IMG/VR virus record: IMGVR_UViG_3300044712_001937
Location: 186,001-250,000 of that record
Reading direction: 5' to 3' (one strand)
DNA length: 64,000 nucleotides
Shown: one piece after another, positions 9,439 through 59,610 of the stretch
Layout: every line of letters begins with the position of its first letter
Numbering within the stretch: the stretch's first letter is position 1
Made by a program: the position numbers and the translations under genes
The notes under the pieces: generated by a model
The model's database searches: none
What the model was told of the DNA's origin: nothing
What the model saw: only the letters and a program-made list of their open reading frames with translations

Positions 9439-9862
9439 TATGGAAAACATAAAAGAAGTCAATGCTAAATTTAAAGAATATGTTGAAGGTAATATAATTA
9501 TTGCAAAATTCATGGGTGCAAGAATAGAGCATGATTATTCTTTTATTGAAAATGTTCAAGATGGTTTAGGATATTATTTCTTAAAAGAAAATGCGCCTGA
9601 AAATGATTTAAGATATTCTACTTCTGGAATAAAATATCATACATCGTGGGATTGGTTAATGCCAGTTGTTGAAAAGATTGAGAATTTTGGAAATTGTGAC
9701 ATTCAAATCCATAGTCATATATTTTATATTAATTTTGAAAATGGAAATTATAAAAAAGATTTTCATAGATATGAAAACTTAACTAAATTAGAAATGGTTT
9801 GGCTTGCTGTAGTGGAGTTTATTAAATGGTATGATGAAACCAAGAACACCAATGTACAGTAA
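9428..9862 (+). CDS. Hypothetical phage protein, paralog of 22507
   Basis: NxxIAxFM...YHTxWDWLMPVVEKI. Confidence 0.75.
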   Translation: MYSNMENIKEVNAKFKEYVEGNIIIAKFMGARIEHDYSFIENVQDGLGYYFLKENAPENDLRYSTSGIKYHTSWDWLMPVVEKIENFGNCDIQIHSHIFYINFENGNYKKDFHRYENLTKLEMVWLAVVEFIKWYDETKNTNVQ

Positions 9863-9921
9863 TATCAGACAAAATGAAACCAAGAACACCAATGTACAGT
9901 AATATCAGACAAAATGAAACC
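9834..9921 (+). repeat. Exact 40-bp tandem duplication (2.2 copies)
   Basis: ATGAAACCAAGAACACCAATGTACAGTAATATCAGACAAA twice, then ATGAAACC. Confidence 0.95.
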
Positions 9922-10228
9922 ACATAGAAAAGAAAAAATAGACCATACTGAATTTAGTAGATTACGTGAAATTTGCTATAATTATCACAAATTTCTGTGG
10001 ACTAAATTCAAAAGACGTATCAGAATTAAACGTTTAAATAAATAATTTAATATTAGAACACCAATGTACACAATGAATAAAACTGATATTAATATTAGGA
10101 AATCCGGTAAAACTTTTGTTAAAAAGGTAAAGAAATGTACTGCAAATAAAGGTGATTATTCATGTACAATTTGGGGTTCTCCTTGGTGTGATGAATGTGC
10201 ATTATATAAATAAATAAATAATTCAACC

Positions 10229-19648: not shown

Positions 19649-19706
19649 TGCGATTTAGCTCAGTGGTAGAGCCGAGGTGTCAGGAGTTCGATTCTCTTAG
19701 TCGCAA
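19649..19706 (+). tRNA. tRNA-like RNA lacking the whole anticodon arm
   Basis: Acceptor TGCGATT/AGTCGCA; D-arm GCTC-AGTGGTA-GAGC; only 9 nt CGAGGTGTC; T-arm AGGAG-TTCGATT-CTCTT. Confidence 0.8.
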
Positions 19707-31416: not shown

Positions 31417-32865
31417 ATGAGTGATATTATCTTAACAAGAAAAATAAAACTTGGTGTTTATGTTCCAGAAATTATTGTTGATGAAAAAGAACGTAAAACA
31501 TATAAAGATTTTGTTTGGAGTTTATTACGGAATATTAATCGACAGAATTTTGAATTTCATAATCTATTAGTAAAAAAACTAATTGAAATTGATGCTATAA
31601 TTTCCTCTCGATTAAGTGTAGATGATAAATTTATCAAATTAAAAAATAATTATTTTAAAGATAAAAAAGTATCAAAACCTTATTTTGATTATATCAAACA
31701 AACACAAAAAGAATATATTGAATCGTTAAGTTATAAAAATATTAATTCTTATATTTATAATTATTTAGTTCAATATATTAAATCATTATCTGATGAACAA
31801 CAATTAATTAATTCATATTCTTATTGCGCAATATCTAAAAATGTTTGTGATAAATATAATGATGATTTATTTGATGTAAATAGAGGTATAAAAAACGTTG
31901 CCTTTTATAAAAATACTCAACCAATTCCTATTAATATAAAAGCACCTTCATATATTGATGAAAAAGGAGTTAAATCAAAATCATTGGGAAAGTTTTGGTT
32001 TAATAAACATGAAGATAAATATGTCTTTAAATTTAAATCTTCAAAAAAACATGATATTGAATTATTACTTTTATTTGGTAAAGATAGAAGTAATAATAGA
32101 ATTATGATTGATAGAATCTATAATAATGATTCTAATTATAAAATTTGTGATTCTGATATTCAAATTATAGATAATGAAATATTTTTATTATTAACAATAA
32201 AACAATTTAATATTGAAAATAAAATTCTCGATAAAAATAAGGTATTAGGAGTTGATTTAGGTATTAAATGTGCTGCATATATTGCTACAAATAATTCATT
32301 AGAAAGACAACAAATAGGTTCTAAAGAATTTGTACTATTAAAAACTAAATTGCAAATTGAAAAAGATAAAAGATTACTTCAACGAAATTCAATATTTTCA
32401 AAATCAGGGCATGGAAGAACAAGAAAACTTCAAAAATTAAATGATTTTAAAGAATATGAAAAGAATTTTAGAAATACTTTTAACCATCAAATATCTTCTG
32501 AAATTATAAGTCATGCAATTAAATGGAATTGTGGTCAAATTAATGTAGAAGATTTATCAGCAATACCTTTAGAAGAAAAAAATAAAAGAATTCTTCGTAA
32601 TTGGGCATATTTTGATTTATTAAATAAAATTGAATATAAAGCTAAAAAAAATGGAATAAACTTTTTAAAAGTTAATCCAGCATATACATCCCAAATATGT
32701 AATGTTTGTGGGAAAAAAGGTGAACGAATAAAACAAGATACTTTTATTTGTATTAATCAGGATTGTAAATTTCACGATAAACCAATTAATGCAGATTATA
32801 ATGCAGCAATTAATATTGCAAAAAATATTAACATAAAAAAAGAAGAAATTGTATCAATATCCTAA
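31417..32865 (+). CDS. cas12f: Compact type V effector (Cas12f/TnpB family), 482 aa
   Basis: RuvC-I VLGVDLG; RuvC-II NVEDLS; Zn finger TSQICNVCG...CINQDC; RuvC-III NADYNAA; adjacent array and anti-repeat. Confidence 0.85.
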   Translation: MSDIILTRKIKLGVYVPEIIVDEKERKTYKDFVWSLLRNINRQNFEFHNLLVKKLIEIDAIISSRLSVDDKFIKLKNNYFKDKKVSKPYFDYIKQTQKEYIESLSYKNINSYIYNYLVQYIKSLSDEQQLINSYSYCAISKNVCDKYNDDLFDVNRGIKNVAFYKNTQPIPINIKAPSYIDEKGVKSKSLGKFWFNKHEDKYVFKFKSSKKHDIELLLLFGKDRSNNRIMIDRIYNNDSNYKICDSDIQIIDNEIFLLLTIKQFNIENKILDKNKVLGVDLGIKCAAYIATNNSLERQQIGSKEFVLLKTKLQIEKDKRLLQRNSIFSKSGHGRTRKLQKLNDFKEYEKNFRNTFNHQISSEIISHAIKWNCGQINVEDLSAIPLEEKNKRILRNWAYFDLLNKIEYKAKKNGINFLKVNPAYTSQICNVCGKKGERIKQDTFICINQDCKFHDKPINADYNAAINIAKNINIKKEEIVSIS

Positions 32866-32889
32866 AATTATATTATATTTGTATCATCA

Positions 32890-33070
32890 TTTTGAATTTA
32901 AGTTCTTTGATATAATTGATATTATTGTTTTTAGTTAAACAATAATTATGGCTGGTTGTACAGCCAAAAGTGAGGTCGAAACCTAAAAAATGAATAATTT
33001 TGAGCAAAGTTTCATAGAACACTCACTAAATATCTTTCATTATTTTTAAATAAAATATTAATTTACAACA
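32890..33070 (+). ncRNA. Putative tracrRNA
   Basis: TATATTTG at 32874-32881; hairpins GGCTG-GTTGTA-CAGCC and AGGT-CGAA-ACCT; anti-repeats TATCTTTCA (33031) and TTTACAAC (33062); 5' end approximate. Confidence 0.65.
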
Positions 33071-33086
33071 AATTACATAAAGGTAT

Positions 33087-33451
33087 GTTGTAAACAACCA
33101 CAAATTGAAAGGTACTTACAACTATTTGGACATAGAAGTACTGATTATATCAGTTGTAAACAACCACAAATTGAAAGGTACTTACAACTCATTACTTACC
33201 TGCCTTTCTTTTATCTAAGTTGTAAACAACCACAAATTGAAAGGTACTTACAACGTGCTGGTAGTCCTCAGATTCGTTTAATTGTTGTAAACAACCACAA
33301 ATTGAAAGGTACTTACAACTATTCAATATACAAGAAATGTATTAAAAGAGTTGTAAACAACCACAAATTGAAAGGTACTTACAACCTATGGTTAGGATAC
33401 TGTTATTTTTTTCATGTTGTAAACAACCACAAATTGAAAGGTACTTACAAC
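33087..33451 (+). CRISPR. CRISPR array: 6 identical 36-nt repeats, 5 spacers (30,30,29,30,30 nt)
   Basis: Repeat GTTGTAAACAACCACAAATTGAAAGGTACTTACAAC at 33087, 33153, 33219, 33284, 33350, 33416. Confidence 0.98.
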
Positions 33452-33487
33452 AGTAGGAGAAGTTCGGGTTCGATTCCCACTACTCTA
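33452..33487 (+). pseudogene. tRNA T-arm remnant
   Basis: GGG-TTCGATT-CCC directly after the last repeat. Confidence 0.4.
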
Positions 33488-33500
33488 TTAAAATTAATTT

Positions 33501-33596
33501 GGTGCTGTTTGTAATGTTGGCTATACATTTTGTCCATGAAGCGTAAAGTGAAGTATGGCAAGCTCAACGTAGGTTCAATTCCTACCAGCACCACCA
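33501..33596 (+). tRNA. 96-nt tRNA-like RNA with encoded CCA and non-canonical anticodon arm
   Basis: GGTGCTG/CAGCACC-A-CCA; D-stem TGTA/TACA; T-arm GTAGG-TTCAATT-CCTAC. Confidence 0.75.
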
Positions 33597-33795
33597 AAAA
33601 ACCAACCGTTATACAGTATAAGCACTGATGTACCTAATAGTGAAGGTGTGATATGCATGAAAGCAAATTATTGTTGTGGGACGGCAATGGTTGTACAGGG
33701 AGTGTACCCTACACTCATAGGGACTGTGTAGATAAATCCTTTACTTGACTGGAAACTCATTTATGAAGAATCAAAAGGTCAGGTAAAGGATTTTT
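33597..33795 (+). ncRNA. Unidentified structured RNA or long terminator
   Basis: GC-enriched non-coding stretch; CAACCGTT/AATGGTTG; GAGTGTA/TACACTC overlapping CCCT/AGGG; AATCCTTTACTTGAC/GTCAGGTAAAGGATT. Confidence 0.5.
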
Positions 33796-35231
33796 CATAA
33801 ATTTGGATATATGGTGTTATAACATAATTGAGCAATTAATTTATGTCCAAGATTTGTACTATGTACTTTATCGTTTAAATAGTAAGTTGTATTATCGGCA
33901 TCAACCAATCCATTAAAAGCTGCATTAGTTGTAATAGGAATTGATATATAATTATTTTCTATTTGACCATTATCTATTAGAATATTTAACGCCTGTGATA
34001 TAGTCCAAAAAGTATCCCATTGACCTGCTGTATACCCAGCAGGTTTCATTGGTCTATTATGTATAACATATGTTTTAAAACCTTTAGCATTAGATGCGTT
34101 AACCAAGTTTATGATGTTAGCATAAATATAATTTTCATTTTTACCCGAAATTAAATCATTAGCACCAATCCAAATAATACTTATATTTTTTTGATAAGAC
34201 AAGTTATAAGCTGCATCTAAATGTGCTTGATAGTTAATTTTCATATCATCACTATTTTGACCGGGGACTGCATCATTAGTTAATATTCTCATTTTAGCCC
34301 CCATTAACAGAGTTTTCAGTTCAGTAGGATAATCTGTAGTAGCTCCTGCATATGCATAACTTAATGAATCACCATCAGTTAATATATTAATGGAATATGG
34401 AATTTTGGGTGTTATTGAATCAACAAGCAAATACTCAAAATCATCGGAAATTGTTTTGTTTAATTTTGAAAAAATAAAAAAATCAGCAGTAGTACCATTA
34501 CAAGAAAAAGCAGCTCCATTGTTTCGAGAAAATAAATTAAGTGTATTTGTTGTATTTGAATTAGCAATTAATGTTCCATTTCTACCAGATAATATTAAAT
34601 TTCTATTTTTGTACAATTCAGCTCTATCATCATTATATATCCATCGAGCTATCATTTTATCTAAACCCCAATTAGTAACAGTTGCATTACCTCCATTATC
34701 TACAGTAGTACGTCTTACAGCCCATGTATATCCATAATTTTGATGTAAATAATTTCCGTTTACTGATAAAACATTTGTTCCATGTTCCATCATAAGCCCA
34801 GCAGGTGCTTGGAAATTGCCAGTTAGAAAGACATCTATCCAAGTTGGTAATACTAATCCAGCAATATTAGATGTTTTATTAGTAACATTTGCCGATGGTT
34901 TGTTATTTAAAGTAACATCAGTGATATTGTATAAATATTGTTTTGCTGTATCAGTTTGTATTTCATGAGCTGTAGAAAATAAATTATATCTTTTTACAAT
35001 CTTATTATCTGTAATTTTTATTCCTGCCCTTGTTGATAATCCAACTAATCCTGACGAATTAATATTATTATTTTTACAAAATTTTAATATATTATTTACA
35101 TAATTTAAATCATTAATAATTCCTCCATCTGCTTCAACCATCTTCTTATATAATAATGTTTCAGATAACAATATATCATCATTTCTTCCAACTCCAATTT
35201 TATTTGCAATACCAATAGTTAAACGTCCCAT
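33795..35231 (-). CDS. SGNH/GDSL hydrolase with beta-rich N-terminal domain
   Basis: Block I TDGDSLS; block III IGANDL; block V DKVHST. Confidence 0.8.
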   Translation of the reverse strand: MGRLTIGIANKIGVGRNDDILLSETLLYKKMVEADGGIINDLNYVNNILKFCKNNNINSSGLVGLSTRAGIKITDNKIVKRYNLFSTAHEIQTDTAKQYLYNITDVTLNNKPSANVTNKTSNIAGLVLPTWIDVFLTGNFQAPAGLMMEHGTNVLSVNGNYLHQNYGYTWAVRRTTVDNGGNATVTNWGLDKMIARWIYNDDRAELYKNRNLILSGRNGTLIANSNTTNTLNLFSRNNGAAFSCNGTTADFFIFSKLNKTISDDFEYLLVDSITPKIPYSINILTDGDSLSYAYAGATTDYPTELKTLLMGAKMRILTNDAVPGQNSDDMKINYQAHLDAAYNLSYQKNISIIWIGANDLISGKNENYIYANIINLVNASNAKGFKTYVIHNRPMKPAGYTAGQWDTFWTISQALNILIDNGQIENNYISIPITTNAAFNGLVDADNTTYYLNDKVHSTNLGHKLIAQLCYNTIYPNL

Positions 35232-40411: not shown

Positions 40412-42697
40412 ATGATTATCAATATAGATAAATTTTCAGACCAAGAAACAGTTTCAACATGTGAAGAAAATGATATTGTATTATCAAAGGATTCTCAAAG
40501 TATGTTTTTTTCATTATTCACAAAAAACATATACTCAAATCCAATTGGTAGTATAGTTCGTGAAATAACTTCAAATTGTTTTGATAGTCATATTGAAGCT
40601 GGTTGTAATATGCCTGTTTTAATTAAAAAAAGTATAGAAAAAGATACTAATACAAATTACATATCGTTTATCGATTATGGTGTTGGAATGTCACCTGAAA
40701 GAATAGATAAAGTATTTAGAGTGATGTTTTCATCAACAAAACGCTCAGATAACGCACAAATAGGGGGCTTCGGACTCGGTTCGAAAAGTTGCCTTGCTTA
40801 CAAGCGTAGCACAGGTTTTGGCGAAGGTGAATATGACAATTCGTATTATATTATTACAGTATATGATAAGATTAAATACATATACAATATATATGAAGGT
40901 CAAAAATGCCCAAAAATATCCTTACTTCATAGTGAACCAACCGAAGATGGTAATGGTACAGAAGTTAAAATTCCTGTATTAGAAAAAGATTTACGTACAT
41001 TCGAATATGAAATGATACGTCAATTATATTATTTCGAAAATATTATTTTTGAAGGTTTCGACAGCACTAAACTTACAAACGATTATCAAATTATCAGGGG
41101 AAAATCATTCCTATTCAGAGGTAATGAATACAAAGATTCAATCCATGTTTGTTTAGGTAGGGTTGCATATCCTTTAGATTATAATACTTTAGGTTTAAAC
41201 GAATCAGATTATCGTTTACCTGTAGCAATTAAATTAAATGTTGGTGATATAAATGTTGTTGCCAGTCGTGAAGGTTTAGATTATTCTGAAAAAACTATTA
41301 AGGTAGTTAAAGCTAAACTGGAAGAAGTTAAAAGTGAAATTATTGGTTTGATTTCCAAACAATATGAGAACATTGTTACATTGGAAGATTATTTTAAAGT
41401 TAAATCTAAGTTTGGATTTCTTTATTTCTCAAACGGTTTATCTATTAATGTAGGTAATGTTATTAGTGTTAAAGATATTAACTATAAAAACTTTCGATAT
41501 AATTCACTTAAATCAATTCCAAAAGATACTGAATTATTTAAGCTGTTTTTCAATGTTGAAGCTTATGGTAAAAAATTAAATAAGAATGTACACCGTAGAA
41601 CCATATTTTTTGATGGAAGTTTCGATGAAATTCTAAGAAAAAATTTCGTTTACTATATAGATACTCCAATGGAACGTAAAAGAATTAAACGTGCTTATAT
41701 GAAGTCTCTGCATGAAACATATTTTGTAATTAGGAAAAATAATTTCATTCATTCAACTAATAGAGAAACAATTTGTGATTTGTTCAATGTTAATTTTAAC
41801 AGTTTTTACAATAAATCAACTGATGGTCAATGTACGGAACTTACTGATTTTTCAAAAACATTGTTAATGTTAAGAGATGAGTTGTTTGAAATTGTTACAA
41901 AATATCGTCAGGATTATAATGAAGTTAATGTTCCGGAAAATTTCATTCTTGAAAAGAAAAGAAATATTATCGATACTAAGATACTTAGAGAAACTAAAAT
42001 TCAAGTTAAATTCTTTGGTGTCAGTGGTAAAGATAAAGTTAAATTATCAGCATTGTTCGATTTAAACATTCCAATTTTTTATGGTTCACAGGATGATGAA
42101 AATAAATTAAACAATGCCAGATATATTCATACTACATTGTTCGGTGGTGGGTCAATGATTTCATATTATGAAGAATATGGTAATAAAATTAACTTTAATT
42201 CAGATAAAAAGGGTATATTGTTCATAATGTTAAGTAAGGGTAATTTAAAATATATGCAATATTGCAAAAAAGCTTACCATATAGATAATTATTACTGGAA
42301 AATGCTTCATCGTAAAGCTGACATGGTTTATGATTACTTCAACAGTTTTGAATTTATTCAATCATATCAAAACTTATCATCAATGTACAAGTCTAATAAG
42401 TTTGATATAATTAATAAAGATTGGGGACGTAAAATTAAAAAAGTTAATGAATATTATCAAAAAATAATTTCAAATAAAAATAAAAATATTGGTGATATTC
42501 GTCAATACTTAACTCCTTATTTTAATTTATCTAATTTAAATCAAAGTACTGAAAATAAAAAAATAAGCAGTATACTTGATGATATTTATAAATTAAAAAC
42601 TGCTAATGAAAAATCTATTAGGTATATTAATATGCCAAATGATTTTTCAACAGATGAAGTATTAATTGATATATTAAAAAAAGTTATGATATTTTAA
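40412..42697 (+). CDS. rIIA: rIIA-like protein (GHKL ATPase N-terminus)
   Basis: IYSNPIGSIVREITSNCFDSH; DYGVGMS; STKR...IGGFGLGSKS; followed by rIIB. Confidence 0.85.
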   Translation: MIINIDKFSDQETVSTCEENDIVLSKDSQSMFFSLFTKNIYSNPIGSIVREITSNCFDSHIEAGCNMPVLIKKSIEKDTNTNYISFIDYGVGMSPERIDKVFRVMFSSTKRSDNAQIGGFGLGSKSCLAYKRSTGFGEGEYDNSYYIITVYDKIKYIYNIYEGQKCPKISLLHSEPTEDGNGTEVKIPVLEKDLRTFEYEMIRQLYYFENIIFEGFDSTKLTNDYQIIRGKSFLFRGNEYKDSIHVCLGRVAYPLDYNTLGLNESDYRLPVAIKLNVGDINVVASREGLDYSEKTIKVVKAKLEEVKSEIIGLISKQYENIVTLEDYFKVKSKFGFLYFSNGLSINVGNVISVKDINYKNFRYNSLKSIPKDTELFKLFFNVEAYGKKLNKNVHRRTIFFDGSFDEILRKNFVYYIDTPMERKRIKRAYMKSLHETYFVIRKNNFIHSTNRETICDLFNVNFNSFYNKSTDGQCTELTDFSKTLLMLRDELFEIVTKYRQDYNEVNVPENFILEKKRNIIDTKILRETKIQVKFFGVSGKDKVKLSALFDLNIPIFYGSQDDENKLNNARYIHTTLFGGGSMISYYEEYGNKINFNSDKKGILFIMLSKGNLKYMQYCKKAYHIDNYYWKMLHRKADMVYDYFNSFEFIQSYQNLSSMYKSNKFDIINKDWGRKIKKVNEYYQKIISNKNKNIGDIRQYLTPYFNLSNLNQSTENKKISSILDDIYKLKTANEKSIRYINMPNDFSTDEVLIDILKKVMIF

Positions 42698-42757
42698 GTA
42701 ACAAATTCAAATTAATATCGTATATTTACGCAAAACAAAATAACTAAATATAAAATT

Positions 42758-43948
42758 ATGGCAAATAAAATAAGTATTCACGTAGTTAAAACAGGTAATA
42801 CTGTCCACATTAGTCTTGGTGGCAAGCTTATTGATAAAAACTGCGGTAATCCTAAAGAAGCTGATGAGTTATTTAAAATAGTTCTTGCTGCGAAGGAAAA
42901 TCCAAGTGAAGATAACTTACGCAAAATTCGTGCATATGTAAATGAAAAATTGCGTGTAGCATATTTAACAGGATTAGAACATGACCCAGATACTGGTGAA
43001 GTATTCTTGGCAGGTTTCAATACCCCAATTCCTCAAACATTGGTTGATATTATCAGGGAGTATCACGAAAATAAATATCCGTTAACACCAATTTTTAACT
43101 TCTGGAAGTTATTAATGATTAATCCGGATAAGCGTGTACGTGAAAGTTTATTCAAATTTATTACTGCTCACGATTTCTCATTAACAGATATGGGATATAT
43201 GATTGTTTATAAAGCAGTATATTTAAAAGACCAAAAACCTGTTCGTGATACTACTTATGAAGATTTCATAAGCACTCAATATCTTCACGTAAAGAATAAC
43301 TGGAAATGTAGTCCTAATAAATATGTGGTTTATAAAAACCTTGCAGATTTTACTTTTGCAATTACAAAATATGAAACTGCTAAGACTTGGGACGAAAAAG
43401 AAAAAAATATCGAAATTCTTGGTAAACTTGGCGATATCTATTCAGCCATTGTTGTTGAAGATAATAAACCGCTTCAATACACTGATATGTATTCCCAAAC
43501 CATGACCATTGAACTTGGTGTACCAGCGAAGAAGGAAAGAAAAGATTGTGATGCTAATCCAGATAAGAATTGCTCTAATGGATTACATTGCGGTGCAACA
43601 AACTATGTAAGCAATTATGCCAAGAAGACAAGTCATATTCTTGTATGTTTTGTCAATCCAATGAATGTTATAGCAGTACCACATTATAACCATTCAAAAA
43701 TGAGGGTTTCAGAATATTTTCCATTCGCTTTAGCTGAATATGATTTTGATAAGAAAAAGATTTCAATTATTGAAGAAAAATATTTCGAAAATGATTATAA
43801 AGCTTATGAAGTTATAGAACTCGAAAAATTGGTTACTAAAGTGAAATCAGAAGAAAAACCAATTGAAAAAGCACAAAATGCCGAAGATGAAGTACGTCCA
43901 ATGTCTGAATTATTAAAAATTATTGAGGGAAGAATGATTGATTTATAA
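42758..43948 (+). CDS. rIIB: rIIB-like protein
   Basis: YKAV...CSNGLHCG...VNPMNVIAVP...KMRVSEY; tandem with rIIA. Confidence 0.85.
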   Translation: MANKISIHVVKTGNTVHISLGGKLIDKNCGNPKEADELFKIVLAAKENPSEDNLRKIRAYVNEKLRVAYLTGLEHDPDTGEVFLAGFNTPIPQTLVDIIREYHENKYPLTPIFNFWKLLMINPDKRVRESLFKFITAHDFSLTDMGYMIVYKAVYLKDQKPVRDTTYEDFISTQYLHVKNNWKCSPNKYVVYKNLADFTFAITKYETAKTWDEKEKNIEILGKLGDIYSAIVVEDNKPLQYTDMYSQTMTIELGVPAKKERKDCDANPDKNCSNGLHCGATNYVSNYAKKTSHILVCFVNPMNVIAVPHYNHSKMRVSEYFPFALAEYDFDKKKISIIEEKYFENDYKAYEVIELEKLVTKVKSEEKPIEKAQNAEDEVRPMSELLKIIEGRMIDL

Positions 43949-58674: not shown

Positions 58675-59610
58675 TTATTTAAATTTCCAAATAAATGATT
58701 TATATTGCTTTCTTATTCCTCTACAACATTCTGAAATTCCAGTTGCATTATAATTAAGCGTTTTTACAATTTCTTGTCCTGAATTCCATTCTTTTATTAT
58801 ATTATTATTAATATCATATTGTATTATTTTTTTTTCGTTATTAATTGAATTCCAATTAACATTATTTTTTGTAAAATAATTTTTAATTGCAGTAATTGGA
58901 ATATTATATTTTTTATGCAAGCCATATATAGTATATTTTCCACTTAAAAAATCATTTTTAAGTATAGGATATAAATTCTTATAATAATTAATTCCATTTA
59001 TTTCAATATTTTTATTTTTATAAGGTATTTCCTTCCATTTATGTTTATAATCACTAATAGGGCATTTACCTATATATTTTAAAAAATTATTAACTTTTTT
59101 TCTAGGTATATTAATCAAATATTGCGTATCTGTTTTTCTCAATGGTTTAGCATCAAAATCAGATAATTTTTCACATAAAAAAATAATTTCATCATACGTA
59201 AATGAATTTGTATGTAATTTAATATATCCATATTTTTTTTCAAGCTCACCATCACCAATATACCACATCAATAATAAATTTTTATTAATTTCAATATCAA
59301 GCGGTACTATTTTAATTTTATTTGCATAAAATCTTAAATATTGTTCAGTAAATACTGATAATGATTTAGTTCTAAATGAGTAATTAATATATGTTTTTTT
59401 AGTTCTATTATCAAAAATTTCTTTTTTTACTATTACTCGATTATTTTCATTACAATATTCTAAAAAAAATTGATGTATATATTCAGTGTGTTGTTTTGAA
59501 GATGATAAATATTTAAAAGATGCATTTTTTCCATTTTTATGTAATTCTAAATGACCATCACCTAATAAGCAACCTTCTAAAATTTTTTGTGTATATGTAA
59601 AATCATTCAT
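58675..59610 (-). mobile_element. LAGLIDADG homing endonuclease with C-terminal NUMOD1-like HTH
   Basis: ILEGCLLGDGHL; LLMWYIGDGEL; tail IIQYDINNNIIKEWNS...GISECCRG...FIWKFK. Confidence 0.9.

What the first reader, a model, noticed from the sequence alone, without database searches (positions are those of the whole stretch)
31417..33451. Phage-encoded compact Cas12f-like system without adaptation genes
Seen in sequence: a 482-aa protein with all three RuvC acidic residues (D in VDLG, E in VEDL, D in NADY) and a Zn finger, a tracr-like region, and six perfectly identical repeats. There is no cas1, cas2 or cas4 nearby. Established: large phages are known to carry miniature type V systems lacking adaptation modules, and 36-nt GTTG...CAAC repeats with about 30-nt spacers are typical of Bacteroidota II-C/VI-B arrays. 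Inference: this is an active hypercompact nuclease that borrows host Cas1-Cas2 and targets competing elements. It may be a new subfamily of editing interest.
Basis: partly seen in the sequence, partly recalled or inferred. Interest (0 to 1): 0.75.

Follow-up and report, generated by a model that had tools for sequence, protein, structure and literature searches.

The report
Jumbo-phage CRISPR-Cas12f with tracrRNA
A complete 365-kb phage genome carries a real miniature CRISPR system (a 482-aa Cas12f nuclease, its helper RNA and a six-repeat array) but no spacer-acquisition genes; the locus is clean and well supported, but phage Cas12f systems of this kind are already known.

Summary
Window 31417-32865 (+) encodes a 482-aa protein with the RuvC D-E-D triad and a CxxC...CxxxxC zinc finger. 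Six identical 36-nt repeats with five 29-30-nt spacers lie at 33087-33451.

Its closest sequence and fold matches are experimentally characterised Cas12f nucleases (Al3Cas12f, AsCas12f, CnCas12f1), well ahead of TnpB, Cas-lambda and Cas12p.

Between gene and array lies a conserved, structured RNA of about 146 nt (32902-33047). One of its hairpin loops pairs with the last 6 nt of the repeat, and its 3' tail pairs with repeat positions 23-28. Both pairings covary across relatives, so this is a tracrRNA.

The host record is a complete 364.7-kb phage with direct terminal repeats. It has no Cas1, Cas2, Cas4 or TnpA.

In 12 related protein clusters the gene-tracr-array order is kept wherever enough flanking sequence exists, while spacers differ. 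Phages with identical Cas12f carry different spacers at the tracr-proximal end. One relative's spacer matches an unrelated phage 30/30 next to a 5' ATT.

No target was found for the window's own five spacers.

Verdict: a new member, in a distinct phage clade, of the known type V-F kind. Huge-phage V-F systems without adaptation genes were reported in 2020. Use of a host Cas1-Cas2 is inferred, not shown.

The parts
31417..32865 (+). cas12f gene: 482-aa RuvC nuclease with a zinc-finger TNB domain. Catalytic residues D280, E378, D460; cysteines C428/C431/C445/C450.
   Evidence: ORF. Pfam Cas12f1-like_TNB 65 bits; NCBIfam guided_TnpB 148.7 bits. PDB phmmer: Al3Cas12f 6e-48, AsCas12f 1e-39, CnCas12f1 9e-39. 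AF2 model pLDDT 86; Foldseek TM 0.72/0.77 to Al3Cas12f.
32874..32881 (+). TATATTTG, a TAnnTTTG-type (Bacteroidota -7-like) motif 21 nt upstream of the conserved tracr 5' block. Possible tracrRNA promoter (inference).
   Evidence: Conserved in the six aligned loci, four distinct lineages. That TAnnTTTG is the Bacteroidota -7 element is from my own knowledge, not tested here.
32902..33047 (+). tracrRNA, about 146 nt; exact ends unknown. It has a conserved 5' GTTCTTTGA block, a variable hairpin and a hairpin GGCTG-GTTGTA-CAGCC whose loop pairs with the last 6 nt of the repeat. It also has a long-range AGTGAGG/CACTCACT stem and an inner stem GAAAC/GUUUC. The 3' anti-repeat TATCTTTCA pairs with repeat TGAAAGGTA and is followed by a T-run.
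   Evidence: Alignment. RNAalifold: 18 pairs, 11 with compensatory changes. Named structure including the two intermolecular helices: 96.3% of cells paired, 9 pairs compensatory, 0/500 shuffles, slid controls 28-54%. The covariance model finds it on the gene's strand in over 40 related loci.
33048..33086 (+). Leader between the tracr terminator and the first repeat. It ends in GGTAT next to repeat 1.
   Evidence: In relatives, new or different spacers sit at this end and degenerate repeats at the far end.
33087..33451 (+). CRISPR array: six identical 36-nt repeats and five spacers of 29-30 nt, transcribed in the same direction as cas12f.
   Evidence: The repeat's 3' half (GGTA...ACAAC) is conserved across the family.
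33452..33487 (+). 3' remnant of a tRNA-Tyr gene directly abutting the terminal repeat. It forms the array trailer and would be the 'guide' of the last repeat transcript.
   Evidence: 19/20 match to the 3' end of the phage's tRNA-Tyr at genome 120004-120088. Not conserved in relatives.
33501..33596 (+). 96-nt tRNA-like gene. It has a 7-bp acceptor stem, a T arm and an encoded CCA, but a non-canonical middle part. It is a neighbour of the system, not part of it.
   Evidence: ARAGORN. Rfam tRNA 29.5 bits and tmRNA-like 31 bits. Fold. 21/23 match to the tRNA-Tyr at genome 119781-119864.

Best explanation
This is a bona fide type V-F (Cas12f1-like) CRISPR-Cas locus carried by a 365-kb jumbo phage.

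Shown here: a single-copy 482-aa Cas12f gene is followed on the same strand by a structured tracrRNA gene of about 146 nt, a short leader and a six-repeat array. The tracrRNA can pair with each repeat at two places. Its hairpin loop GUUGUA pairs with the last six repeat nucleotides, which is a pseudoknot next to the guide. Its 3' tail pairs with repeat positions 23-28.

Inferred from the characterised relatives Al3Cas12f, AsCas12f and CnCas12f1: a Cas12f dimer loads one tracrRNA:crRNA duplex, consisting of a repeat-derived 5' handle and roughly 20 nt of spacer. It recognises a T-rich 5' PAM on double-stranded DNA and cuts both strands with the single RuvC site (D280/E378/D460).

Inferred from relatives: the guides are directed against other phages competing for the same host. 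Because the complete genome has no Cas1, Cas2 or Cas4, new spacers would be inserted at the tracr-proximal end by an adaptation module supplied in trans by the infected cell. The most plausible donor is a Bacteroidota type II-C Cas1-Cas2, which makes spacers of the same 29-30-nt length.
For: Effector identity.
- PDB sequence search gives Al3Cas12f 6e-48, AsCas12f 1e-39, CnCas12f1 9e-39, Un1Cas12f 7e-19 and Cas12p 1e-13. ISDra2 TnpB is not found at E<=1.
- Foldseek on an AF2 model (pLDDT 86) gives Al3Cas12f TMq 0.72/TMt 0.77 and AsCas12f 0.66/0.74. TnpB 8H1J scores 0.51 and Cas-lambda 0.42.
- The catalytic triad and the four zinc-finger cysteines are conserved.

tracrRNA.
- 11 of 18 RNAalifold pairs have compensatory changes.
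- The two intermolecular helices covary. Loop GTTGTA/GTTGTG/GTTGCA matches repeat ends TACAAC/CACAAC/TGCAAC. Tail ATACCCC matches GGGGTAT, and TATCGTTC matches GAACGGTA.
- Overall 96.3% of cells pair, 0/500 shuffles reach this, and slid controls give 28-54%.
- The same RNA family lies beside the gene in Alistipes-type loci. For that enzyme family, tracrRNAs and T-rich PAMs were determined experimentally (PMC13186708).

Conserved association with changing content.
- All 12 homologue clusters at 48-71% identity have the tracr after the gene wherever sequence exists, and 36-nt repeats follow where the contig continues.
- Phages with the identical protein P0007 carry 0 or 1 spacer at this array, with three different spacers seen.
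- Phages with the identical protein P0009 share only the cas-distal spacer and differ in 5-6 proximal ones. Distal repeats are degenerate in L009 and L095.

No adaptation or transposition genes. Cas1, Cas2, Cas4 and Y1 TnpA are absent from the complete genome, which has direct terminal repeats and is rated 100% complete.

Trans donor plausibility. In 5 Bacteroidales genomes with related Cas12f loci, Cas1 was found in 4, always on another contig. The one inspected is cas9-cas1-cas2 with a 47-nt-repeat array and 29-30-nt spacers. The Cas12f array of the same genome has 30-31-nt spacers.

Target. A relative's only spacer matches 30/30 a different phage contig that encodes terminase and portal, with a 5' flank of GGATT.
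Against: - None of the window's five spacers has a match. Five 23-mers were tried in IMG/VR, one 22-mer in JGI metagenomes and the whole array in GenBank phages. Its targets and PAM are therefore unknown.
- No expression or cleavage data exist.
- The phage's host is unidentified. A sample of 401 Bacteroidota genomes gave nothing useful.
- No array variation was seen for this particular phage, because the public contigs break at the array.
- The homodimer prediction gave no answer.
- A type II-C adaptation module selects a 3' PAM. Whether such spacers would carry the 5' PAM that Cas12f needs is unresolved.
- Spacer differences between strains could also arise by recombination rather than integration.
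Confidence: 0.85

Rival explanations
1. The strain-to-strain spacer differences do not come from Cas1-Cas2 integration borrowed from the host. They come from recombination between arrays of co-infecting phages or host arrays with similar repeats. The system would then be a guide-swapping rather than an adapting one.
For: No adaptation genes are in the genome. Identical repeats make homologous exchange easy. All six repeats of the window's array are identical, which fits homogenisation.
Against: The variation is polar: only the cas-distal spacer is shared between L011 and L014. Distal repeats are degenerate. Spacer length is tightly 29-31 nt. All of these are hallmarks of leader-end integration. 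No second source of the same repeat was found in IMG/VR or in the metagenome collection.
Confidence: 0.25
2. The effector binds but does not cut, or the locus is an inactive relic. It would act as a programmable repressor, like the 'dCas14' case in huge phages, or do nothing.
For: No targets were found for the five spacers. Al-Shayeb 2020 describe a phage Cas14 lacking a catalytic residue. Activity is untested.
Against: The RuvC triad and zinc finger are intact and conserved. The repeats are perfect. The tracr pairing is intact. Relatives show spacer turnover and a perfect protospacer in a rival phage.
Confidence: 0.07
3. The array is a phage 'mini-array' that feeds guides to a host effector (Cas13b or Cas9 of Bacteroidota) and is only coincidentally next to a TnpB-like gene.
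For: The repeat (36 nt, GTTG...TTGAAAGGTA...ACAAC, 30-nt spacers) resembles Bacteroidota type VI-B repeats as I recall them. This was not tested here.
Against: The adjacent tracrRNA covaries with the repeat at two helices across 8 lineages. The gene-tracr-array order is kept in over 40 loci. The same 36-nt repeat type accompanies all family members, including characterised Al3Cas12f-type loci.
Confidence: 0.04
4. It is an IS200/IS605-type TnpB with an omega-RNA, and the repeats are unrelated.
For: NCBIfam's generic guided_TnpB model passes its cut-off (148.7 vs 100 bits), and Pfam OrfB_IS605 gives a weak hit.
Against: There is no Y1 TnpA, and the genome has only one full-length copy of the gene (a second TNB-domain match at 144562 is below Pfam's cut-off). 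The RNA starts 37 nt after the stop codon rather than overlapping the gene's 3' end. It pairs with a separate repeat transcript. Characterised TnpBs are far more distant than Cas12f in sequence and fold.
Confidence: 0.02

Closest known systems
Al3Cas12f (Cas12f-MG119-28, Alistipes; PDB 9NZO/9NZR; PMC13186708)
   Same: It is the best sequence hit (E 6e-48 over residues 129-471) and the best fold hit (TM 0.72/0.77). It shares the FGRDxSNN motif, the RuvC triad and the zinc finger. It has a long helical REC, a 36-nt repeat ending ...CCAAC/ACAAC, and small arrays about 230 nt downstream. The same tracrRNA family is detected by my covariance model in Alistipes loci. As reported, it has a T-rich PAM, a 129-156-nt guide and is an obligate dimer.
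   Different: Identity is only about 28-37%. The window's clade is a separate, fully supported branch with a long stem, made of phage or phage-like contigs. It is encoded by a jumbo phage from rhizosphere samples rather than by a gut bacterium. Its PAM and activity are unknown.
AsCas12f / CnCas12f1 / SpCas12f1 / OsCas12f (type V-F1, PDB 8J12, 8HR5, 9I8Y, 9NZQ)
   Same: Same domain order and fold (TMt 0.64-0.74), a tracrRNA-dependent guide and no adjacent adaptation genes.
   Different: 23-28% identity. They come from Firmicutes and other bacteria, and their repeats and tracrRNAs are unrelated in sequence.
Huge-phage type V-F / 'Cas14' variants (Al-Shayeb et al. 2020, PMC7162821)
   Same: The same biological situation: class 2 miniature effectors next to small arrays in phages over 200 kb, almost all lacking Cas1/Cas2/Cas4. 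Their spacers target competing phages or host genes.
   Different: I could not obtain those sequences, so whether this protein belongs to one of their named groups (Cas14i-k) is untested. That paper gives no tracrRNA or strain-level spacer-turnover analysis for this clade.
Un1Cas12f1 (Cas14a1; PDB 7C7L, 7L48)
   Same: Miniature dimeric V-F effector with a tracrRNA. Its repeat, as I recall it (not tested here), also starts GTTG and ends GCAAC.
   Different: Much more distant (E 7e-19, TM about 0.6). It comes from archaea (DPANN).
ISDra2 / ISFba1 TnpB with omega-RNA (PDB 8H1J, 8EXA, 8IAZ)
   Same: Same ancestral RuvC/TNB core. A pseudoknot next to the guide is a shared RNA feature (from my own knowledge of these structures).
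   Different: There is no transposase, no transposon ends and only one full-length copy. The guide RNA is split into tracr and crRNA, with exchangeable spacers. Fold similarity is only TMq 0.46-0.51.
Cas-phi (Cas12j), Cas-lambda (Cas12l), Cas12p 'hacker': other phage-encoded type V effectors
   Same: Phage-borne, compact, without adaptation genes.
   Different: They are larger (500-800 aa), and Cas-phi and Cas-lambda need no tracrRNA. Similarity is weak: Cas12p E 1e-13 with TMq 0.47, Cas-lambda TMq 0.42.

Membership tests
Type V-F CRISPR-Cas (Cas12f) | Single small (about 400-700 aa) effector with a C-terminal split RuvC domain carrying the D-E-D triad | tested here: met
   482 aa. E378 and D460 are invariant and D280 is at least 90% conserved in 65 homologues. 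All three align to the Al3Cas12f motifs.
Type V-F CRISPR-Cas (Cas12f) | Zinc-finger TNB (target nucleic-acid binding) domain inserted in RuvC | tested here: met
   Pfam PF07282 Cas12f1-like_TNB scores 65 bits against a cut-off of 26. The four cysteines are invariant.
Type V-F CRISPR-Cas (Cas12f) | Closer to characterised Cas12f than to TnpB or other Cas12 subtypes | tested here: met
   The phmmer and Foldseek rankings both put Al3/As/Cn/Sp/Os Cas12f first. TnpB, Cas12p, Cas12m, Cas12k and Cas-lambda are far behind. No joint tree with named reference sequences could be built, because PDB sequences are not exportable.
Type V-F CRISPR-Cas (Cas12f) | Conserved physical association with a CRISPR array whose spacers vary | tested here: met
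   Arrays lie 100-330 nt downstream in most of about 60 related loci. Spacers differ between phages with identical effectors.
Type V-F CRISPR-Cas (Cas12f) | tracrRNA with an anti-repeat | tested here: met
   Covariation supports both tracr:repeat helices and the internal stems. The covariance model finds the RNA family-wide. Expression was not tested.
Type V-F CRISPR-Cas (Cas12f) | Acts as an asymmetric homodimer on one guide RNA | tested here: inconclusive
   The complex prediction returned 'no answer' (score 0.18, mark 0.42).
Type V-F CRISPR-Cas (Cas12f) | PAM-dependent, RNA-guided dsDNA cleavage (5' T-rich PAM) | not testable with these tools
   The only hint is one protospacer for a relative's spacer, with a 5' flank of ...GGATT.
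IS200/IS605 TnpB-omega-RNA transposon | Associated Y1 TnpA and/or transposon ends, multiple copies, omega-RNA overlapping the gene's 3' end with a fixed guide | tested here: not met
   No PF01797 hit in the genome. Only one full-length copy (a second, sub-threshold TNB match at 144562). The RNA starts 37 nt after the stop codon and pairs with separate repeats.
Autonomous (adaptation-competent) CRISPR-Cas locus | cas1 and cas2 (with or without cas4) in the locus or genome | tested here: not met
   There are no hits at E<=1 in the complete 364,702-bp genome, while the control genomes were positive.
Phage-encoded Cas-lambda / Cas-phi | 700-800-aa effector, crRNA only (no tracrRNA), self-processing | tested here: not met
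   The protein is 482 aa, a tracrRNA is present, and fold TMq to Cas-lambda is 0.42.

The most novel reading that the evidence does not exclude
A whole clade of phage Cas12f loci keeps an up-to-date immune memory without any integrase of its own. During infection the host's Cas1-Cas2 (probably the type II-C module of Bacteroidota, which makes the same 29-30-nt spacers) would insert new spacers at the phage's tracr-proximal leader. The phage would thereby 'learn' rival phages through the machinery of the cell it is killing. The strain-resolved differences seen here would be the natural record of this: identical effector, 0 or 1 different spacers; shared distal spacer, divergent proximal ones.
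Probability: 0.45. Interest if true: 0.55.

Novelty: new member of a known kind. Interest (0 to 1): 0.4.

Why it matters
It adds a cleanly delimited, complete example of a phage CRISPR system: effector, tracrRNA with a covariation-supported fold, leader and array. It sits in a finished 365-kb phage genome that provably lacks adaptation genes.

The clade offers natural strain series in which spacer gain can be read off. That makes the long-standing idea of trans-adaptation by host Cas1-Cas2 directly testable, using a defined leader-repeat substrate.

Practically, it is another 482-aa Cas12f with a defined guide RNA scaffold, from an AT-rich soil phage. It might have a different PAM or temperature profile from the gut-derived Al3Cas12f family. 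Many Cas12f orthologues already exist, though, so the editing interest is incremental.

Tried and rejected
- Spacer targets. Spacers W1-W5 as 23-mers against IMG/VR, W3 as a 22-mer against JGI metagenomes, and the whole array against GenBank phages all gave no real hit. Arrays of two relatives against GenBank phages gave none. All 24 spacers and pseudo-spacers of the clade were compared with the phage genome and all fetched loci at up to 5 mismatches. There was no self- or cross-targeting.
- Other copies of the repeat. A 30-mer of the repeat gave no hit in IMG/VR or the metagenomes, so no host array with this exact repeat was found.
- Host search. The array was run against 401 Bacteroidota genomes. 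The only hit was a 28/30 match spanning a spacer-repeat junction inside a coding-like region of a 1.5-kb contig. I judged it to be chance.
- Rfam. No family reaches its gathering score on the tracr, either here or in 18 related loci. The weak DUF2693-RNA similarity (22.8 vs 81 bits) was dropped.
- Array variation in public runs. The phage is present in four rhizosphere runs, but the Logan contigs break at the array, so nothing can be said.
- Homodimer prediction: no answer.
- Conserved accessory gene. The upstream ORFs are not conserved between relatives, and the neighbours have no CRISPR-related domains.
- Repeat-like motif in the leader as a self-regulatory cr-like RNA. No match of the leader to the region upstream of cas12f was found in 7 loci.
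- The tRNA-like sequence after the last repeat as part of the system. It is absent in relatives and is explained as a decayed tRNA-Tyr copy.
Full report
**1. What is there**

The window lies at 186001-250000 of a single 364,702-bp virus record. The record has direct terminal repeats, is rated 100% complete and has 26.3% G+C. It carries rIIA/rIIB genes, 49 tRNA genes and a tmRNA, so it is a jumbo phage. Public runs that hold it are rhizosphere metagenomes.

At 31417-32865 (+) is a 482-aa ORF. From 33087 to 33451 there are six identical 36-nt repeats separated by spacers of 30, 30, 29, 30 and 30 nt. No other copy of the repeat exists in the genome, even with six mismatches, and no spacer matches the phage itself.

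**2. The protein**

Pfam finds the Cas12f1-like TNB zinc-finger domain. NCBIfam's generic RNA-guided TnpB-family model passes its cut-off, and the Cas12f2 model does not.

Against all PDB sequences the order is:
- Al3Cas12f, 6e-48
- AsCas12f, 1e-39
- CnCas12f1, 9e-39
- RhCas12f, SpCas12f1 and OsCas12f
- Un1Cas12f, 7e-19
- Cas12p, 1e-13

ISDra2 TnpB is not reported even at E<=1.

An AlphaFold2 model built on 65 homologues has pLDDT 86 and pTM 0.71. Over its full length it superposes on Al3Cas12f (TM 0.72/0.77) and AsCas12f (0.66/0.74). TnpB reaches 0.51 and Cas-lambda 0.42.

E378, D460 and the four zinc-finger cysteines are invariant in both alignments, and D280 is at least 90% conserved.

Al3Cas12f comes from Alistipes. 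It is reported as an obligate dimer that uses a 129-156-nt guide and a T-rich 5' PAM (PMC13186708).

**3. The RNA between gene and array**

Aligning the intergenic DNA of relatives shows a conserved element that starts 37 nt after the stop codon with GTTCTTTGA and ends in a T-run.

RNAalifold on eight lineages predicts 18 pairs, 11 of them with compensatory double changes.

Two stretches of this RNA are complementary to the repeat rather than to the RNA itself:
- The 6-nt loop of a covarying hairpin is complementary to the last six repeat nucleotides. The window has GTTGTA with TACAAC. Relatives have GTTGTG with CACAAC, GTTGCA with TGCAAC, and GTTGGA with TTCAAC through a G-U pair.
- The 3' tail is complementary to repeat positions 23-28. 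The window has TATCTT(TCA) with (TGA)AAGGTA, and relatives have ATACCCC with GGGGTAT and TATCGTTC with GAACGGTA.

I counted a named structure that includes both intermolecular helices. 96.3% of cells form standard pairs, nine pairs change on both sides, no shuffle out of 500 reaches this, and sliding the partners drops pairing to 28-54%.

A covariance model built from the eight sequences finds full-length matches in more than 40 related loci. They are always on the gene's strand and nearly always between gene and array. They include the Alistipes/Rikenellaceae loci of the Al3Cas12f type.

This is a tracrRNA, with a pseudoknot next to the guide as in other Cas12f/TnpB RNAs (the comparison is from my own knowledge). 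No Rfam family covers it.

A TAnnTTTG motif conserved upstream (32874-32881) resembles the Bacteroidota -7 promoter element. That is inference only.

**4. Is the association with the array real?**

Twelve protein clusters share 48-71% identity with the window's protein. For each of them, the contigs I could fetch show the tracr directly after the gene. Where the contig continues, 36-nt repeats with the conserved 3' half GGTA...ACAAC and a period of 65-67 nt follow. Many contigs end at or just after the first repeat, as assemblies do at arrays.

More distant relatives (30-40% identity) occur in IMG/VR phage contigs and in Bacteroidales MAGs. Most of them also have small arrays of 2-13 repeats downstream, with the same 36-nt repeat type.

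In a maximum-likelihood tree the window's clade (8 rows) has 100/100 support. It sits on a long stem, apart from the bacterial clade of Alistipes, Prevotella and Bacteroidaceae.

**5. The arrays are dynamic**

Phages encoding the identical protein P0007 have, at this array, either a solitary repeat with no spacer (five contigs) or two repeats around one spacer. Three different spacers occur in three contigs. One of the solitary-repeat contigs, L001, has a second identical repeat 3.6 kb downstream, so a further array may exist there.

Two contigs encoding the identical protein P0009 have identical tracr, leader and trailer. They share only the spacer farthest from the gene and differ in the five or six nearer ones.

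In L009 and L095 the repeats farthest from the gene are degenerate.

Together this indicates polar insertion at the tracr-proximal end, which is the signature of Cas1-Cas2 integration.

Yet the window's complete genome has no Cas1, Cas2 or Cas4. It also has no Y1 transposase, and cas12f is its only full-length gene of this family.

In five Bacteroidales genomes with related loci, Cas1 was found in four, always on a different contig. The one I inspected is a classical type II-C module (Cas9, Cas1, Cas2). It has a 47-nt repeat beginning GTTGTG and ending ACAAC, with spacers of 29-30 nt. The Cas12f array of the same genome has spacers of 30-31 nt.

Use of an adaptation module in trans is therefore plausible for the whole family, bacterial and viral. 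It has been hypothesised before for V-F1 (bioRxiv 10.1101/2024.04.09.587696) and for phage arrays (PMC7162821). It remains an inference. Recombination between arrays is the main rival, and the PAM compatibility of a II-C donor with Cas12f is unresolved.

**6. Targets**

None of the window's five spacers found a match.

The single spacer of one P0007-phage strain matches 30/30 a 7-kb IMG/VR contig that encodes a terminase large subunit and a portal protein. The match lies inside a glycosyltransferase-like gene, and the 5' flank is GGATT. This is one data point in a relative. It fits inter-phage targeting and a T-containing 5' PAM, and it says nothing directly about this phage.

**7. What lies after the array**

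The sequence abutting the last repeat (33452-33487) is a 3' remnant of a tRNA-Tyr gene, matching 19/20 the 3' end of the phage's own tRNA-Tyr at genome 120004-120088.

It is followed at 33501-33596 by a 96-nt tRNA-like gene. That gene has a perfect acceptor stem, a T arm and an encoded CCA, but an aberrant central part. It is related to the neighbouring tRNA-Tyr at genome 119781-119864.

Relatives have nothing of the kind after their arrays. It is not part of the system. It may mark the place where the cassette was inserted.

**8. Comparison and novelty**

Functionally and by every membership feature I could test, this is a type V-F1-like Cas12f system.

Phage-borne V-F/'Cas14' variants lacking adaptation genes were described in huge phages in 2020. 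Further phage miniature Cas12 enzymes have been characterised since, including Cas-phi, Cas-lambda and Cas12p.

What is new here is modest. It is a distinct phage clade at about 28-37% identity to the nearest characterised enzyme. It has a fully delimited guide-RNA architecture supported by covariation. And there is strain-level evidence for spacer turnover in loci that lack an integrase.

I rate it a new member of a known kind, with interest 0.4.

**9. Limits**

- There is no expression, PAM or cleavage evidence.
- The host is unknown.
- The dimer prediction gave no answer.
- Reference Cas12f/Cas14 sequences with names could not be placed in my tree.
- All collection scans need exact matches, so diverged protospacers would be missed.

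Noticed in passing
window 33452-33487: A 3' remnant of a tRNA-Tyr gene directly abuts the terminal CRISPR repeat (19/20 to the 3' end of the phage tRNA-Tyr at genome 120004-120088). It would be the 'guide' of the last repeat transcript. It may mark insertion of the cas12f-tracr-array cassette into a tRNA paralogue.
   Followed up: partly
window 33501-33596: A 96-nt tRNA-like gene with a perfect 7-bp acceptor stem, a T arm and an encoded CCA. A long irregular hairpin replaces the D and anticodon arms. ARAGORN calls it tRNA-His(atg). Rfam scores it 29.5 bits as tRNA and 31 bits as a tmRNA-like acceptor/T-arm. Its function is unknown.
   Followed up: partly
genome 148036-148110 (outside the window): A tRNA with a CUA anticodon, which is a TAG suppressor, stands among 49 tRNAs. 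A tmRNA lies at genome 111992-112351. This could mean TAG recoding in part of the phage genome. ORFs around the finding read normally in code 11.
   Followed up: no
window 19649-19706: Rfam tRNA hit of 43 bits that is only 58 nt long and is not called by ARAGORN. It may be a truncated or unusual tRNA.
   Followed up: no
window 33048-33086, and the leaders of L009, L094, L106, L107, L109: The motif AACAACCACAAA is conserved 25-40 nt upstream of the first repeat in relatives. In the window the same motif sits inside the repeat (positions 7-18). L094's leader looks like a degenerate copy of the window's repeat. The motif could be a leader element recognised during spacer integration, or a fossil repeat.
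   Followed up: partly
L018, L020, L021, L022 (IMG/VR phage contigs): In this sister group the tracr-like RNA lies upstream of the cas12f-like gene. L018 has arrays and tracr copies on both sides of the gene.
   Followed up: no
L001 5659-5694 and 9360-9395: In a relative with a solitary repeat after the tracr, a second identical repeat lies 3.6 kb downstream, at the end of the fetched locus. These phages may carry a second array.
   Followed up: no
window 33795-35231 (-): The convergent 478-aa ORF has a C-terminal GDSL/SGNH esterase domain (Pfam 33.6 bits). It may be a tail-associated deacetylase. A strong 19-bp hairpin at 33731-33796 looks like a shared terminator.
   Followed up: partly
window 40412-43948 and 58675-59610: rIIA and rIIB homologues lie at 40412-43948. 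A LAGLIDADG plus HNH homing-endonuclease ORF lies at 58675-59610 on the minus strand.
   Followed up: partly
window 9834-9922: A perfect 40-nt tandem repeat, 2.2 copies (TRF score 178).
   Followed up: no
genome 144562-144720 (outside the window): A weak second match to the Cas12f TNB zinc-finger domain (22 bits, below the cut-off) in a 245-aa frame next to the tRNA cluster.
   Followed up: no
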